Positions 1-9,769 of a stretch of DNA of 64,000 bases are shown in pieces. Source of the stretch: Podarcis vaucheri. Taxonomy: Eukaryota. The stretch lies in assembly GCA_965113315.1 (NCBI GenBank), contig OZ220364.1, one strand, 5' to 3'. The notes below the pieces were generated by a model that saw only the letters and a list, made by a program, of their open reading frames with translations, was not told where the DNA came from and did not search any database. Numbering within the stretch: position 1 is the stretch's first letter; every line of letters starts with the position of its first letter. Both the position numbers and the translations under genes were made by a program.

Positions 1-102
1 CATGGAATTTGCTATAGCTCACAGTCGGCATCTTGTGTCACAATTGTTTATTGCACTTTACAACACATTCAAAACGTTGTTTGCAGCTGTATAGCTAAGT
101 CC
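1..102. repeat. Partial copy of an interspersed repeat (MITE-like), homologous to 3030-3200
   Basis: Aligns by eye with 3096-3199 (tgtcaca..attgcactt..acaca..tttgcagctgtatag..agtcc). Confidence 0.55.
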
Positions 103-2204
103 TCCAGATCTCCAGATTGTATTTCTTTGCAAGAAGTGAGATACAGACAGATACTTTCAAGCTGACCATCACCTTGTTGCATTTCATCAGAAAGAATTCT
201 GCTTAATTCTTGAACCCCAATAGTTCACAGTTCCTGCTAAGTCTTTTACACAGCACTTTTCTTGCTATACCCTATAAAACTGACAGCATTGAGGGGAAGT
301 GAATGTGGCTAGAGAGCTCGAAAGGGGTTTGCAAGTGATCCAGATCAACATCTTTACTACGTTCATAAGTCATTAGTTTCTCTTTGAATACAGAATTGTT
401 GAGGCCATCCAGGTTACATAGATGAGTTGCATGTAGAGGAATAAGTTACTGCAGTTGGAGCATGGCTTCCTAAGATAGGCACTAAGATCCAAAGTACACA
501 CTTCAAAACTTGATGAAATTGAACTAAAGTTCTTGATTCTGAAGGCTGCAGCATGGATGGCATTGCGTTAAATCTTCAGGTCATAAAAAAACAAAATAAA
601 ATCAGAGCAAGGGAGATTTGGCCATAATTAAATCATGTCTGCTGGAACATGACTTTAATCCCGAAGTACCTAATGATTCTGCGTATCTAGAATAGAAGAG
701 CAAGTACTAGACTGGCAAGTTCCCCCTAAGCTTTCTTCTTCAGAGTACCGGTGTTGAACAGCCCCATAATAATCTAAAACTCTAGCTGGAGAACTGCCCC
801 CCCCCATGTCCTTTTCGTGCAGCTTCAAACTTCCCCTCAAGGGTTGGGGCAGGCACCATCCAACTCAGGTTTTTCTTTTTCCTTGACGAAGGTTCAGGAT
901 TTAGAAAAGTAAAATCTATTCAGAGAGAATTAATTCCAGTACATTTTTTGACAAGAATTATAGAATTACTATATTTGAGTAAAGACTGTCTCCATGCCAA
1001 CCATTACAGTTCGCTTTATTTCACAACAGAGATCGCTGGAATGATTATGGTGAGCTCATCTCCACTGTCTTAGACAAGGTTCCTTATCATTTTACTCTTC
1101 CGAAGGATGCTTTCATATACACGTTGCTTTAGGAACAGTGGTACAACCCTCACAGTTGCCTAAGGCATTATTTATCCTGTGTATCTCACCTTAGATCCTT
1201 GAAGAAGATGCCTTAAGGACTTCGTTTCTTCTCTTACTTTTTTGAATTTCTAGGAACGGTCATTGTATCCACCCCCCATTCCTATTGGAAACCTCAACAC
1301 CACTGAGAGATCAGAATAATTTACTTTCTCTCTTCTTACTTGTGAGCCTCTGGTTGGATTTTCCTTTTTTGTGGGGCGGGAATCCTAAGAAGCAGATCAG
1401 AGAAGCAGCATGGCAGATCTCTGTGTCCCCCTCTCTGTCTCTCCTTAATTAGCAGAGGACTCAAGGAGATTTGGATACATCCCTTTTCCTAACAGTCTTG
1501 ACTTGACCGTTGGTTTTTATGTATGTAAACATACTGAATCTTCCTCTCCTGTTTGTTCTGCCCCTGCAAAGGGGTAGGTTTTGTTAGTGTTAGAAGAGGA
1601 GATTTCTTACCTGGAAATACTTGTGAGAGATTCGGATCCAGAAACTTCCTTGTTCCTCACACAATCACAGAGTGGACAGTGAAAGCTAGCTTCTAGCTCT
1701 TCCAGTTTCTTAGGGAAGAATTCAGTTCACTCCGATCTAAATAAGTAGAGTAATAGTTACTTCTCCTGATTGGTGGATCCAAGACACAAGCACTAGTTTT
1801 CAGGTAAGAAATTTACCTTTATCAAAACATGATGAAGCAATGTAGTGGTAAACAATGTAGCAAATTGTGACAAAGAAGGTCAGTGGCACTAATTAGTTGA
1901 TTTTAGCTAGCAATTTTATTGCAGGTATGTAGTTCATAGGACAAAAGGAAATACTGCATCTGAAATTAAGGCTTGCATGCTATTCCTAAATGGTCTTGCT
2001 TGGAGGTAAGCCCCATTTATTTCCGAGGGATTTACTCTCAAGTAAGGTGGCAGCGGATTATAGCCTTCCATGGCTTTCATGCATTAGTATGAGTGGTTTC
2101 AAAAAGGCTTTAAATGAACTGCCACACACTTTGCTTTTTTTCCTTTTTCCAAAAAGAGAGGTATAGACTAGCCCTTAACAAGGAACTGAAATGTGCTCAT
2201 TTTG

Positions 2205-2233
2205 TATATAAAAGGCAGTCTGTCTTTTCAGTT
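2205..2233 (+). promoter_or_regulatory. Candidate internal core promoter: TATA box (TATATAAAAG, 2205-2214) and Inr-like TCAGTT (2228-2233)
   Basis: Consensus TATA about 125 nt upstream of a strong-Kozak ATG and a 5' splice donor. Confidence 0.45.
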
Positions 2234-2331
2234 ACTATGTGTGTATGTGTTATTGTGTCATGTGATAACAGCACTGTGTTTTCCTGTCATTTTTACAACT
2301 CTTTCCTGGCTGAAGTGATACACAAGCAACA

Positions 2332-2411
2332 ATGGGTAGTAATCACATTGCCCCGTTCACTTTCAAAAGGAGAGAAGCGGAGATGATCGTGAAACTTTCC
2401 AGCAGGCTACA
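2332..2411 (+). CDS. MAP2K4: Candidate alternative first coding exon of MAP2K4 (MGSNHIAPFTFKRREAEMIVKLSSRL-Q)
   Basis: Kozak acaATGG; 26 codons plus CA, then donor GTAAGC at 2412; phase 2 matches the exon 3 acceptor (CA|A=Gln, then ERLRTHS). Confidence 0.6.
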
Positions 2412-3029
2412 GTAAGCGTGACTGTCTGTTAGCCCCGTTGTCAGATATTTTCATAATAGAAAAAGCAAAAGAAAGAAAAAGGCATGAACACCAATATAGA
2501 TCCTTGCAGAAATTTGTCATATTATGAGTGAATTAATATATATATATTTAAATTAATTATTAAATACTTTCAACATATATTTCATTATTATTGTTTAAAG
2601 CTTATTGCTGCATTTGTACTAGCAATTCCCAATGTTCTGTCCCAGCTGACTGTCATTGGCTCTAGAAAGACAGTGTATTTTTTTTTTTAAGAGTACTGGT
2701 ATTCAGAGGGTGACTCAGTGTTAGTTTACAAAAACCTCTCCTTTTAAAACCATAAACATATAATTCTCAAGCATGGTTGACCATAATGGATGGAGTTGAT
2801 GCAGGTGTTATAAGGTTGTTGCATATTGCCTCCAAAAAGCCTTCACTGATAGAACAGCTCTAAAACCTATGAATCAAGTGATCTTTTGTGAAGTATTATT
2901 TTATTTTTGTAGCTGCCATACTTCCAACACCTATTGATCTGTAAAACTGCCCCCCCCCAAACAATTACCGTAATGGACCAGTGAAAGTGAAACGTATGCT
3001 TCTGGTGAAGTAAGCCTGAGGCACAATTG

Positions 3030-3200
3030 AGGTAGAATCTACACTTATAAAAACTGTTCTGAAAACGCTTTTTTAAAAGTGTTTTTTTGAAAATACATTG
3101 AATTTCCCGTAAGGCTCACCATCACCAACTAGTGTCACATTGTATATTGCACTTAAAACACACTTAAAATGTTTTATTTGCAGCTGTATAGATGAGTCCC
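3030..3200. repeat. Interspersed MITE-like repeat
   Basis: Second copy at 1-102; loosely inverted ends (aatctacac ... gtatagatgagtcc). Confidence 0.5.
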
Positions 3201-4090
3201 AAGGCAACTGAAGAGTTGCCGTCCATTGCGCGGGTGTTAGATTTTGTTCTGAATCTTCTTAATTCATATTGGCTTTGAGTACTTCTAAAACATTTTAACA
3301 TAACATTGTAGCGAGTCGTGGAGGATACGGAAACATTCTGAGAAGATCAAGTATTTTCATCAATTTGGCGCAGTTCATCAGGTCCAAATTTCTGAGTCAG
3401 GCAATGCAGTACATTTCTGGGTAGCTAAAATGGTGTGACCTTAAAGCTACTCGCCCAAACAATGCAAATAACTGTGCTAGTTCCATGTTTACCCTTCCAG
3501 GAGAATAAAGAGTCTTCTCTAAGGTCCCCTGCCTCATACTCACTAAGGTAATTTAGGAAATTAAACCAATCCTCATATAAAGGAAATTGTATTTTTATAC
3601 CCTATTTTAGATCGGATTTAAACTCCATAAAAAGTTATAATAAAAGAATCTATTTCCTTAAAATATTTTTTGCTGAATGTGAAATTGTAACTTAGAGGTT
3701 TGGGGTAGCAGACTGCAGGCCTCTGGGGACTACTTTGTTATTTTCTTAGATCCCATGAACTGGAGACAGGTATAAAAGATTTATAACTGAAGTGTGTTAA
3801 GCCCAGGAATTTGCCTTTAAGTTTTGGAACTGAAAAGAGCCTCTAGTGCTTCCTTACAAAAATATACTTGGTCATATATCATCCTCTCCTCCCCCCCCCC
3901 CTTGGTTTCCACAGGGATCATTTTGTTGTTGCCGTTGTTTGTTAAGTTGAAAGCCAGTCTTTGTCAATCTACTTCACATCCCCCAGGGATCTGTCAGTAG
4001 ATTCCAATTTAACTACTCTGCTATCCCAAACAAGGTTATTGGGCTCATCATGTTCAAATCACTGATTTTGTTAAGTCATCCCATATACAT

Positions 4091-4116
4091 ACACACACAC
4101 ACACACACACACACAC
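4091..4116. repeat. (AC)n microsatellite
   Basis: Direct observation. Confidence 0.95.
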
Positions 4117-7100
4117 GAGAGAAACACATCAGTACCCCTCCATGCTATAATTGCCTGAAGAAGGCTTCACTTTGCTGGTCTTATGCGCAGAATCAGGCAT
4201 ATCACTAGCTCTGCTCCCTGGGCATCCATGCATAAGATTCTCCTCCGCAGAGATTGGGGTCTCATGCCATGACTATGATGCTTTGCCTTGAAAAGTGGCA
4301 ATGCTTACAGGATGTGTTTACATCGTTTGATATATTTCTTTGTTGTGATGAAGAGGGACAGGCAATTTTGTCCCAAAGCTTTTCTGCTTCAGTTTTTAGG
4401 CATCTGCAGCAGTATGTATGTCATTTACCAGCACATCTGTAATACCTCTTGTGCCAGTGCTGGAAAATCTGGGCAAAGCAAACAAGAATGATCAAGCAGG
4501 ATTCAAGAGTGCCTGTTGTCTTGCCAGGGCAGCAATATTACTTGATACCTTGCCTCTTAGGAAAGAAATACTGTCTCTGATTGTTGGCTGTTGATGGTCT
4601 CACTCCTGTGAAATTATTTCTGTGTCCTTTCAGTTGCTGGTAGTTTGTTCATATTTTTTTTTGTCATACTATAAAATGTGGCAAATGATTTGACTAGCGT
4701 AAGCACTTACAAGTGTTGCAATAATGGCTTTCAAGCTCCATAGCACTCCTTCTCGTAGTAAATCTGCCCCCTTAGCATGAAGGCCTTTTAAAATGTTCTT
4801 TTGCCATTGGTTTGACTAATGGTTCCATTGTCTGTTGCAAAGTGTACTGTTATAACCACAGCACGTACACATATTTTCTGTAGACCTGGAAAGAATTAAG
4901 ACTGGCTTCTTTTGTTAATCTATAAATTCTGAGATCTTTTGTATTGATAATTGCCCTCCATCGAGTTGGCTTTCCAAACCCTTAAGAACAAGGTACTGCT
5001 ATGTTATCTTCCTGTACTAGAATATTGCTTTGTAGTCTTGCAGTGTGCTGTGTTAAGGTTTTACTACTCCACAGAGATCCTGGGCTCATAGATCTCTCAT
5101 TCACAAGGACCCCTTCTACATAATGCCCCGATTGGTGACAATGGAATCAGGAAGCATTAACGTATGATATTTCTGATGAGGGGATTTAGAGCTATTGTGA
5201 TATTGCCATAAAAACAGCTCTTTCCCCCAGTACTATTAGTCTGTGTGGAACAGTAGTGATCAGAACTGGGATCCCACGGGCAATGTGTGATTGGCAACAC
5301 TGATCACCTGCAGATGCATTTGTATAGAAGTCCTCTGTGCATAATTGCTCTGTCAGTATTTCTCATTGAGTCACAAACAGTTTTATCACCCTTAGAACAA
5401 GAATGCTAAAGTTTGGGGTTTTAGCTGGAGCTGTATACCTGTCCCAAATCTTTGAGTTCTGTTTCAGCAGCTGTCTAGCAACTTGTATGCCTTCTAGATT
5501 GGCCTTATTAACTAGCACATGGTTCTTGTTCTACAAGAAACTGAGGCATATCCTTGTAAATTCCCCAAATCTGATGGCTTACTTTAGCAGAAGGTAAGAT
5601 GGAAAAAATGAAATACTCCTCTCCAGAGAGTCAGAAACGTTTAAAACAATAAAATAAACAGGCAATATGCCTATAGAAAAAGAAAGGTCTGCTGTGAACC
5701 AGCAGCTGCACTAATCAACTAATCTCTTCTGAATTAGATTTAAATTCCTTTAGCGCCATGCAGTGCATTACCAGTCTCAGTCACTGATTCTGCTAGGACT
5801 GAAATGGGAATGAGAGGTGGGAGAGGTGTTCAGGTCCTTGTCTGAACATGTAAGCACCAAATTGTGTAGGGATTCTGGGTCCAGTGTACAAGCCCTGCCC
5901 CAAACTTCATCATGCACACTTCCCTCATTCAGTCCCTGACCTTCTCTTGTGTAGGGAAGGTCTGTGTAGGGATGCTCCTCAGGTGAATGCAAGTACAGCT
6001 CTCTTCGTGATCAGTCATGTTCAAGTGAATGTGGGTAGAATCCCTATACAAGATGGGAACGCTTGGAGACTTAGTAGAGAAGGGGCGTGTGCAGTGACAT
6101 TGAGGGTCAAGCTTGCATGCATACTTCTGTCCCTCTATGTGGTTTGGCACTTTTGTAGTCATACCTATACACAGTTGGAGTTGGGTGTTATCAACTCCTG
6201 ATGACATAGCACTCCAAAAACACTGAAAAATCTTGTGCAGTGGTTTCTCGTAGATGTCAGACACCATGAGGCACAGAATTGAACTTTTCTCCCTTGTTGG
6301 ATATTCTTCAGTAATGTTAATTTAAATTTGATATGTATATTTTAAACACTGTTGTGCACCACCCTAAAATGATGTTAAGAGTGGTACAGAAACGTTTTGT
6401 ATATATATTAAGCTCTGCTTTCCTGCAGCTTTCCTAACAAAAGGACAGTACATATTGAAAATGAGGATTTGTTCTGGTGTTACTTAAATACAGTAACCTT
6501 AAATGGATTTGTGTTGATGTGTAGTGACATTGACTTAAACCTTCACTGTGGATAGAACCCTGATTTACTTTTGTATACTTTGGTTTATAATCATATTTTG
6601 AGTGCTACTATGACTTCTCTCTCCTTTCTCCTCCATATAAAAACCAAAAGCTTCTGGTAGCTAAATTAATTTCTTAGTATTTTAATATTTGGTTGTATGA
6701 AAAGGAAAATGGAAGTAGTTTGCACACACAACTAAATTAGGCAGATCTTCTAAGCATCCAAATGATCCTTTCACCTAGGTATCTGAAGGGTTGATTAATG
6801 ATAGAATCAGAAACGGTATCTGCCTTTGACTTTAAGATAAAAATATTGGAATTCCACGGAAACCTGATAGATATTGTTTTATTCATTACTTAACCTAGAG
6901 GGAGGCAGGGTCCTAGCCCACCAGCTCAGGCTTGTGACAGTTTGGCCACATCTATCCCAAGGTTATCAGGGTGGGGGCAAGCCATTTGAATTCTTCTACA
7001 TGTTACTGATGTTCGAGTCCTGGAAATCTTGTCTTAGCAAGATGGTGAGCTGTGCTCTTGTTATATATGTGTTATTTGGGGGTATTTCAGTAACTACCCA

Positions 7101-9594: not shown

Positions 9595-9769
9595 AGAGAG
9601 ACTGAGAACACACAGCATTGAATCATCAGGAAAATTGAAGATTTCCCCTGAACAACATTGGGATTTTACTGCAGAGGACTTGAAAGATCTTGGAGAAATT
9701 GGACGAGGCGCTTATGGTTCTGTCAACAAAATGGTCCACAAGCCAAGTGGGCAAATTATGGCTGTTAAA
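9595..9769 (+). CDS. MAP2K4: MAP2K4 exon 3 (ERLRTHSIESSGK...GEIGRGAYGSVNKMVHKPSGQIMAVK), glycine-rich loop and catalytic Lys
   Basis: Poly-T tract and AG acceptor, GTAGGT donor, 175 bp; peptide matches MKK4. Confidence 0.98.

What the first reader, a model, noticed from the sequence alone, without database searches (positions are those of the whole stretch)
2205..2417. Hidden alternative first exon in MAP2K4 intron 2 that would swap the MAPK docking N-terminus
Seen in sequence: TATATAAAAG (2205), Inr-like TCAGTT (2228), a strong Kozak acaATGG (ATG 2332), an open frame MGSNHIAPFTFKRREAEMIVKLSSRL, and donor CA|GTAAGC at 2411/2412. Its phase (2) fits exon 3 exactly, giving ...LSSRLQERLRTHSIESSGK. 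Established: the MKK4 D-site for JNK/p38 (KRKALKLNF) lies in exon 2, which this transcript would skip. Inference: this would be an isoform with an intact kinase domain and a new N-terminus. That N-terminus has its own D-motif-like pattern (KRR-x5-V-x-L) and a Gly2, a weak myristoylation candidate because position 6 is not Ser. It could change substrate preference or localisation. The ORF track misses it because it is only 80 nt.
Basis: partly seen in the sequence, partly recalled or inferred. Interest (0 to 1): 0.8.

Follow-up and report, generated by a model that had tools for sequence, protein, structure and literature searches.

The report
Conserved MAP2K4 cassette exon, already annotated
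The stretch is a real 96-base alternative coding exon of the stress-kinase gene MAP2K4, spliced in between exons 2 and 3 rather than being a hidden first exon; it is conserved from lizards to birds, turtles and monotremes and is already in public gene models.

Summary

The same reads show the exon is internal. It starts at an AAG acceptor (first base 2316) and is joined upstream to the end of MAP2K4 exon 2. That is 16 of 16 reads in two RNA runs, plus one contig in a third run. No read runs colinearly over 2228-2315, and no pile of read starts is seen.

The exon is 96 nt (32 codons) and is open only in the MKK4 frame. It therefore inserts 32 residues after the docking site instead of replacing it.

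- **Already annotated:** the identical insert is in the RefSeq model XP_028572940.2 (Podarcis muralis, isoform X2).
- **Conserved:** near-identical 32-residue inserts occur in skink, worm lizard, turtle and bird models. Longer versions with the same 14-residue end occur in crocodilians and monotremes.
- **The proposed start Met is not conserved:** it is Leu or Pro in birds and turtles, while the residues "upstream" of it are conserved as coding.
- **The D-motif-like pattern is squamate-only.**

Verdict: a real, conserved, already annotated cassette exon. The first-exon reading is not supported. Its function seems unstudied. This scan had not noted it before.

The parts
2316..2411 (+). Alternative cassette exon of MAP2K4. 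It is 96 nt: the third base of an Ile codon, 31 full codons (2317-2409), then the first two bases of a Gln codon.
   Evidence: loose ends before 2316 match the end of exon 2, and loose ends behind 2411 match the start of exon 3; only the MKK4 frame is open; the identical insert is in XP_028572940.2 (P0286).
2266..2315 (+). 3' splice-site region of the cassette: a branch-point-like TTTAC 21 nt upstream, a moderate pyrimidine tract, and a non-consensus AAG acceptor.
   Evidence: sequence; 70% pyrimidines against 85% for exon 3. (reads begin to match the genome exactly at 2316).
2412..2417 (+). 5' splice site GTAAGC, preceded by ACA (no G at -1).
   Evidence: approximate score 5.9, against 6.3 for the exon 3 donor. 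(5 reads of X21 leave the genome at 2411 and continue with exon 3 letters).
2332..2334 (+). It is an internal Met codon of the cassette.
   Evidence: Met in squamates, Leu or Pro at this position in bird and turtle models; the exon starts 16 nt upstream and is joined to exon 2.
2205..2233 (+). TATA-like and Inr-like motifs, with no sign of use.
   Evidence: no colinear reads and no pile of read starts. TATA-like heptamers once per 842 nt; 8 TATA+Inr pairs on this strand in 64 kb.
9595..9769 (+). Constitutive MAP2K4 exon 3 (starts ...ERLRTHS, holds the GRGAYG loop). It is the downstream splice partner of the cassette.
   Evidence: 100% identity to vertebrate MKK4 proteins.

Best explanation
Window 2316-2411 is a conserved, frame-preserving alternative cassette exon of MAP2K4 (MKK4). 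It lies in the intron between the exon that encodes the MAPK docking site and exon 3.

Shown:
- The exon is spliced to exon 2 upstream and to exon 3 downstream.
- It adds 32 residues between ...QNPHI and ERLRTHS...
- The insert is kept at about 80% identity between lizards and birds/turtles.
- Its last 14 residues (ending KLSSRLQ) are also kept in crocodilian and monotreme models.
- It is already annotated.
- Both splice sites are sub-optimal, as is usual for regulated exons.

Inferred:
- The insert lengthens the flexible tether between the docking site and the kinase core.
- It places a short, probably helical, Leu-rich segment directly in front of the RxRxxS phosphorylation motif (Ser80 in human numbering).
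- Inclusion therefore most likely tunes how MKK4 engages JNK/p38 or its own regulators. It does not change which docking site is present.

I put the identity as a conserved coding cassette at about 0.9, and the specific tuning mechanism at about 0.3.
For: - **Reads.** 9 (X21) and 7 (X22) raw RNA reads, plus one X1 contig, carry the end of exon 2 (letters that encode ...PGVPFQNPH plus AT) directly before 2316. Five X21 reads carry the start of exon 3 directly behind 2411.
- **No unspliced reads.** All 17 and 9 reads laid from these runs are only partly on the genomic stretch.
- **Strand.** The exon reads all have their first mate on the minus strand, which fits + strand RNA in a usual stranded library.
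- **Depth in X1 (my arithmetic from table 2).** The cassette-specific contig has word depth of about 99, against about 6 over the intron.
- **Frame.** The exon is 96 nt, and the two other frames have stops. A random 96-nt intronic stretch is open in the needed frame 17% of the time, and a length divisible by 3 adds a further factor of one third.
- **Gene models.** The identical insert is in P0286 (P. muralis) and P0290 (Tiliqua). Rhineura differs at 1 residue. Turtles share 27/32 and birds 25-26/32. Crocodilian (52-residue) and monotreme (40-residue) versions share the terminal core.
- **Similarity tests.** BLASTP of the window frame against the platypus-type protein P0010 gives 10/14 identical, E = 5e-05. 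Insert-to-insert scores lie 13-37 SD above shuffles.
- **Alternative use.** Skipped forms exist in the same groups (P0185 Podarcis lilfordi; P0300).
Against: - Inclusion level and tissue pattern were not measured, because the single read-laying run could not hold both the cassette and exon 3.
- Read depth is low: 16 junction reads.
- The cross-species evidence comes from automatic gene models, not cloned cDNAs.
- No orthologous DNA could be fetched, so dN/dS was not computed.
- The structure model is poor (mean pLDDT 40), so the helix at the conserved core is only a hint.
- No experiment on the insert's function was found.
Confidence: 0.9

Rival explanations
1. One reading: an intronic promoter (TATA at 2205, Inr at 2228) drives an alternative first exon. 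Translation starts at ATG 2332, exon 2 is skipped, and the product is an MKK4 without the canonical docking site and with a new N-terminus.
For: The motifs exist. A TATA+Inr pair is not very common: 8 on this strand in 64 kb. The ATG has a good context and is the first in frame after a stop at 2311-2313. One public model from two manakin species (P0284) starts with six residues directly followed by the cassette and has no docking site. This looks like read-through of the acceptor from an intronic start. Met at this position is squamate-specific.
Against: All 16 reads that reach the exon's 5' end in two RNA runs, and the X1 contig, are joined to exon 2 at 2316. None of the reads laid from X21 and X22 lies colinearly on 2228-2315, and no pile of read starts is seen. 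The Met is not conserved, while the residues before it are. The manakin model may simply be an incomplete 5' end.
Confidence: 0.05
2. The cassette acts by adding a second MAPK docking (D) motif, KRR-x5-V-x-L, behind the canonical one. That would raise or redirect binding to JNK or p38.
For: The regular expression for a D-motif matches the window's insert and the other squamate inserts. MKK7 uses several N-terminal docking sites, and splicing modulates one of them (PMC4604346).
Against: The match is lost in all bird, turtle, crocodilian and monotreme versions. The conserved part is the end of the insert, not the basic cluster plus phi-x-phi. The pattern occurs by chance in 17% of shuffles and in 13% of stop-free 32-mers from non-coding DNA.
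Confidence: 0.1
3. The exon is splicing noise or a non-productive exonisation without a protein-level role.
For: Both splice sites are weak. Read counts are low in X21 and X22.
Against: The exon preserves the frame and is free of stops. It is 78-84% identical at protein level between lizards and birds/turtles, about as conserved as the neighbouring constitutive exon 2, and its core reaches monotremes. Word depth in X1 is about 16 times the intron background.
Confidence: 0.03

Closest known systems
RefSeq/UniProt gene models of MAP2K4 that contain this exon. Examples: XP_028572940.2 isoform X2 (Podarcis muralis); XP_066470793.1 (Tiliqua scincoides); XP_061472421.1 and XP_061472423.1 (Rhineura floridana); isoforms of Caretta, Chelonia, Chrysemys, Coturnix, Parus, Taeniopygia, Meleagris; Ornithorhynchus XP_028912710.1; Tachyglossus XP_038598768.1.
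   Same: It is the same exon: same position between ...QNPH(I/M) and ERLRTHS, same phase, and the insert is identical (Podarcis, Tiliqua) or near-identical.
   Different: Nothing differs for the Podarcis model. Monotreme (40-residue) and crocodilian (52-residue) versions share only the last 14 or so residues, so the 5' part or the acceptor differs.
Map2k4-delta / MKK4-delta splice variant (Haeusgen et al. 2014, Biochim Biophys Acta 1843:875, cited in PMC8699841).
   Same: It is also an in-frame extra exon in the N-terminal regulatory part of MKK4. [quoted passage not shown]
   Different: From my memory of that paper and of the human isoform record, not checked here: the delta exon adds 11 residues in front of the docking site. 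That insert (GFQINFCEKAQ...) is seen upstream of the docking site in P0185, P0177 and P0010. It is a different exon and can occur together with the cassette described here.
MKK7 (MAP2K7) exon 2, regulated by CELF2 and JNK (Martinez et al. 2015, PMC4604346).
   Same: It is a small alternative cassette in the N-terminal docking region of the other JNK kinase kinase, where inclusion or skipping changes signalling output.
   Different: MKK7 exon 2 interrupts a docking site (PMC4604346). The MAP2K4 cassette lies behind an intact docking site. There is no sequence relation, and regulation of the MAP2K4 exon is unknown.
Other inserts at the same exon 2/3 junction in non-amniotes: amphibian models (P0198, P0201, P0204), shark and ray models (P0210, P0227), mormyrid map2k4b (P0034).
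   Same: They sit at the same junction, preserve the frame, and have similar size (17-38 residues). The amphibian one is conserved between frog and salamander, 24 SD above shuffles.
   Different: They show no detectable sequence similarity to the amniote cassette (scores at or below the shuffle mean). Common origin is neither shown nor excluded.

Membership tests
Alternative first exon with its own promoter | Transcripts begin in or just upstream of the exon (5' ends, reads colinear with the upstream DNA). | tested here: not met
   none of the reads laid from X21 and X22 is colinear over 2228-2315, no place where many molecules begin, and every laid read of X21 and X22 is only partly on the stretch.
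Alternative first exon with its own promoter | The exon is not joined to any upstream exon of the gene. | tested here: not met
   9+7 reads and one contig join the end of exon 2 to 2316.
Alternative first exon with its own promoter | The start codon is conserved in orthologues. | tested here: not met
   Leu or Pro replaces the Met in bird and turtle models. The monotreme and crocodilian versions differ entirely in this part.
Conserved coding cassette exon | Both splice junctions are seen in RNA. | tested here: met
   table 7: loose ends at 2316 (exon 2 letters) and at 2411 (exon 3 letters).
Conserved coding cassette exon | Length is a multiple of three and the exon is open in the gene's frame. 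| tested here: met
   96 nt; only the MKK4 frame lacks stops.
Conserved coding cassette exon | The protein sequence is conserved in orthologues at the same junction. | tested here: met
   squamates 31-32 of 32, turtles 27/32, birds 25-26/32, and the core is shared with crocodilians and monotremes.
Conserved coding cassette exon | Transcripts without the exon also exist, so it is alternative. | tested here: inconclusive
   Gene models without it exist in the same groups (P0185 Podarcis lilfordi, P0300 Motacilla). The exon 2-exon 3 junction was not counted in reads here.
MAPK docking (D) motif | Basic cluster, spacer of 1-6 residues, phi-x-phi. | tested here: met
   one match in the window's insert. 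Chance rate is 13-17%.
MAPK docking (D) motif | The motif is conserved in orthologues. | tested here: not met
   no match in bird, turtle, crocodilian or monotreme inserts.
MAPK docking (D) motif | Binds JNK or p38. | not testable with these tools
   Needs binding assays.
N-myristoylated protein | Gly at position 2 of the mature N-terminus. | tested here: not met
   The Met-Gly pair is internal, because the exon is joined to exon 2 in frame.

The most novel reading that the evidence does not exclude
The cassette is an ancient amniote regulatory module of MKK4, kept for roughly 300 million years in sauropsids and monotremes. I saw it in no therian model, and I found no paper on it. Its conserved Leu-rich end would form a helix directly in front of the RxRxxS (Ser80-type) site. 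That helix would change docking geometry, inhibitory phosphorylation or partner binding, giving non-therian amniotes a second, functionally distinct MKK4. A still bolder variant: squamates, which alone have a Met here, also start a docking-site-free MKK4 at 2332 from a minor intronic promoter.
Probability: 0.3. Interest if true: 0.5.

Novelty: already known. Interest (0 to 1): 0.25.

Why it matters
MKK4 is one of the two kinases that activate JNK, and it also activates p38. Its short N-terminal tail holds the docking site and an inhibitory phosphorylation site.

A deeply conserved alternative exon that inserts 32 residues exactly between these two elements probably tunes stress signalling. In the paper library searched here I found only the delta variant described. 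For comparative signalling biology this is a cheap, testable lead: express MKK4 with and without the cassette.

For the scan, the lesson is methodological. A motif chain (TATA, Inr, Kozak, ORF, donor, phase) pointed to a real exon but gave the wrong architecture. An equally good or better chain at 5403-5593 is silent.

Tried and rejected
- **Self-BLAST of 1900-2700 against the window.** No repeat was found, so the exon is not a repeat copy within the window.
- **Literature.** Only the delta variant of MKK4 and MKK7 exon 2 turned up. No paper on this cassette was found, and Haeusgen 2014 is not held.
- **Word search with the platypus-type insert as region.** It returned only the query, because isoforms with the insert are hidden inside 90% clusters. 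They were found later through cluster listings.
- **The bacterial promoter/terminator scan.** Not relevant to a vertebrate gene.
- **AlphaFold2 on a 34-sequence alignment.** Mean pLDDT was 40, too poor to interpret. It is used only for the remark that the sole helix predicted in the N-terminal 106 residues (80-93 of P0290) coincides with the conserved core.
- **NES reading of the Leu-rich core.** Rejected: the i, i+4, i+8, i+12 spacing fits none of the usual NES classes (own knowledge).
- **Joined sequence.** I did not build the joined exon 2-cassette-exon 3 sequence. Exons were searched apart by reference, and public protein models stood in for the joined product.
- **Human entry.** P0316, listed in a cluster, was left out of all scripts.

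Full report
**1. The observation**

- TATATAAAAG at 2205 and TCAGTT at 2228.
- ACAATGG with its ATG at 2332.
- A 26-codon open frame over 2332-2409.
- CA|GTAAGC with the GT at 2412.

Exon 3 of MAP2K4 starts at 9595 behind a long T-run and CAG. Its first base is the third position of a codon, so a phase-2 donor fits. The remaining MAP2K4 exons (IRSTV, MELM, DFG/SIAKT, DVWS, the C-terminal ...MYVD) follow at 13.5-22.6 kb. The site therefore lies in the intron upstream of exon 3, 7.2 kb away. The window has no N and no second copy of this stretch.

**2. Is it more than chance?**

On motifs alone, no.
- **Other ATG-donor chains.** The 9.6 kb upstream of exon 3 holds 7 other GT donors reached in phase 2 by an ATG-started frame of at least 10 codons. 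Three of them score higher on an approximate donor matrix, for example 5403-5593: 63 codons and AAG|GTAAGA.
- **TATA-like heptamers.** They occur once per 842 nt in this AT-rich DNA.
- **The D-motif-like pattern.** It is met by 17% of shuffles of the peptide and by 13% of stop-free 32-mers translated from non-coding DNA of the window.

**3. What RNA shows**

The look-up of sequencing runs listed 18 holders in 5 studies, plus raw RNA runs of the same species label. I laid two raw bulk RNA runs (X21, X22) and two contig sets (X1; X2 of a second species label) on window 1-6000, which is the allowed maximum.

- **Depth in the raw runs.** It is nil over nearly the whole 6 kb, with small traces in a few other bins, and peaks in the bin 2201-2400 (4.25 and 2.61). 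All the reads over the exon have their first mate on the minus strand, which fits + strand RNA in a usual stranded library.
- **Spliced reads only.** Every laid read is only partly on the stretch (17 of 17 in X21, 9 of 9 in X22).
- **Upstream joint.** Nine reads in X21, seven in X22 and one X1 contig have foreign letters before 2316. Their consensus ends ...CCACACAT and reads Pro-Gly-Val-Pro-Phe-Gln-Asn-Pro-His plus AT. That is the end of the docking-site exon as it appears in the Podarcis protein models.
- **Downstream joint.** Five X21 reads have foreign letters behind 2411 that are the first letters of exon 3.
- **No first-exon signal.** No joints, start piles or colinear reads support a transcript start near 2230.
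- **Depth in X1.** The depths of the two bins imply a cassette-specific contig at word depth of about 99, over an intron background of about 6 (my arithmetic).
- **A silent control.** The stronger-looking chain at 5403-5593 has no RNA above background.

**4. Anatomy**

- **Size and frame.** The exon is 2316-2411, 96 nt. With the AT left by exon 2, its first base T makes ATT (Ile). Bases 2317-2409 give 31 codons. CA plus the A of exon 3 makes CAA (Gln). The other two frames carry stops.
- **Acceptor.** It is AAG rather than YAG, behind a 70% pyrimidine stretch, with a TTTAC 21 nt upstream.
- **Donor.** It lacks G at -1.
- **What this suggests.** Weak sites of this kind are usual for regulated cassettes.
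- **Chance.** A random 96-nt intronic stretch is open in the needed frame 17% of the time. With the one-in-three chance of a length divisible by 3, that gives about 5% for a random exonisation.

I did not build the joined exon 2-cassette-exon 3 sequence. Exons were handled apart by reference.

**5. Relatives**

- **First hit.** A search of 1.84 billion representatives with exon 3 returned one protein, P0010, with an insert before ERLRTHS that ends like the lizard's. BLASTP gives 10 of 14 identical, E = 5e-05.
- **Blank search.** A word search with that insert found only itself, because such isoforms sit inside 90% clusters.
- **Identical inserts.** A search with the kinase part of a Pogona model and the cluster listings then gave many MKK4 models. 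The insert identical to the window's is in XP_028572940.2 (isoform X2, Podarcis muralis; P0286) and in Tiliqua scincoides (P0290).
- **Near-identical inserts.** Rhineura differs at one residue. Turtles (Caretta, Chelonia, Lepidochelys, Natator, Chrysemys, Carettochelys) share 27 of 32. Birds (Coturnix, Parus, Lonchura, Taeniopygia, Zonotrichia, Motacilla, Anser, Meleagris) share 25-26 of 32.
- **Longer versions.** Crocodilians carry a 52-residue version and platypus and echidna a 40-residue version, both with the same terminal core ending KLSSRLQ. Scores among these inserts lie 13-37 SD above shuffles.
- **Therians.** The therian models I saw lack it. That is "not seen", not "absent".
- **Non-amniotes.** Amphibians, sharks and rays, and some fishes have other in-frame inserts at the same junction, with no detectable similarity to this one.

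The identity to the P. muralis model fits that.

**6.

- **Myristoylation.** The Gly2 idea falls with the start codon.
- **The D-motif.** The basic cluster plus V-x-L pattern is squamate-only.
- **The docking site.** It is not swapped; it is retained upstream of the insert.
- **The one public hint.** It comes from two manakin species and starts six residues before the cassette without a docking site (P0284). It may equally be an incomplete 5' end.

**7. How it most likely works**

Shown: a conserved, alternatively used coding insert of 32 residues lies between the docking site and the RxRxxS motif that precedes the kinase core.

Inferred:
- The insert lengthens the tether.
- Its conserved Leu-rich end forms a helix that continues into ERLRTHS. 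In a poor AlphaFold model (mean pLDDT 40), the only helix predicted in the N-terminal 106 residues is 80-93 of P0290, which is exactly this core.
- Inclusion would then tune docking geometry, access to the inhibitory phosphosite, or partner binding.

The nearest functional precedent is MKK7 exon 2, where a small N-terminal cassette changes JNK docking and pathway output (PMC4604346). The only MKK4 splice variant that reviews list is the delta form (PMC8699841, citing Haeusgen 2014). By my recollection that form is the 11-residue exon in front of the docking site. That insert is seen separately in several of the models here.

**8. Novelty and verdict**

The exon is real and interesting as biology, but it is already in public annotation of this very genus and of dozens of other amniotes. 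It is therefore not a discovery of the scan. I found no paper on its function.

- The first-exon, promoter, start-codon and docking-swap reading is not supported.

**9. Limits**

- Only one lay of reads and one run search were allowed, so the inclusion level is unknown.
- The cross-species evidence rests on automatic gene models.
- One human protein entry that appeared in a cluster list (P0316) was left out of all work.

Noticed in passing
window 3090-3200: A short stretch has very high word depth in X1 (111, against about 6 around it) and in X2. Contigs run off into foreign letters on both sides. The foreign letters before 3122 resemble the window's own flank at 3091-3120, so this looks like an interspersed repeat whose other copies are expressed.
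   Followed up: partly
window 5403-5593: An ATG-started frame of 63 codons ends in a strong phase-2 donor, AAG|GTAAGA. On paper it is a better alternative first exon than the reported one, but it shows no RNA above intron background in any of the four runs.
   Followed up: yes
window 1960-2465: The X1 individual differs from the window at about 1% of places in the flanks (6 in 1226-1959, 9 in 2466-3158). It shows no difference in the roughly 460 covered bases around the exon, including the about 350 intronic bases upstream. This could be constraint on flanking intron or chance (roughly 1 in 100).
   Followed up: partly
P0011 (XP_078242070.1, Pogona vitticeps isoform X1), not in the window: The model has 157 GC-rich residues ending ...QQHAG joined straight to exon 3. 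This looks like exon 1 read in another frame with exon 2 skipped, giving a docking-site-free MKK4 model.
   Followed up: no
P0284 (XP_027522276.1 and XP_032562236.1, manakins), not in the window: A 364-residue model starts with six residues directly followed by the cassette and has no docking site. It is either an intronic start that reads through the cassette's acceptor or an incomplete 5' end.
   Followed up: no
P0198, P0201, P0204, P0200 (amphibians); P0210, P0227 (shark, ray); P0034 (mormyrid): Other in-frame inserts of 17-38 residues occur at the same exon 2/3 junction. The amphibian one is conserved between frogs and salamanders. None resembles the amniote cassette. This junction seems to be a recurrent site for alternative exons.
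   Followed up: partly
P0185, P0286, P0165 (Podarcis, Rhineura), upstream of the window: Squamate models carry a delta-type insert (GFQINFCEKAQ) and a further short Cys-rich piece (NCCCEEIGG) in front of the docking site. The docking site itself reads KRRALKLNF instead of KRKALKLNF.
   Followed up: no
MAP2K4 next to MYOCD is the arrangement I recall from human chromosome 17p12 (own knowledge).
   Followed up: no
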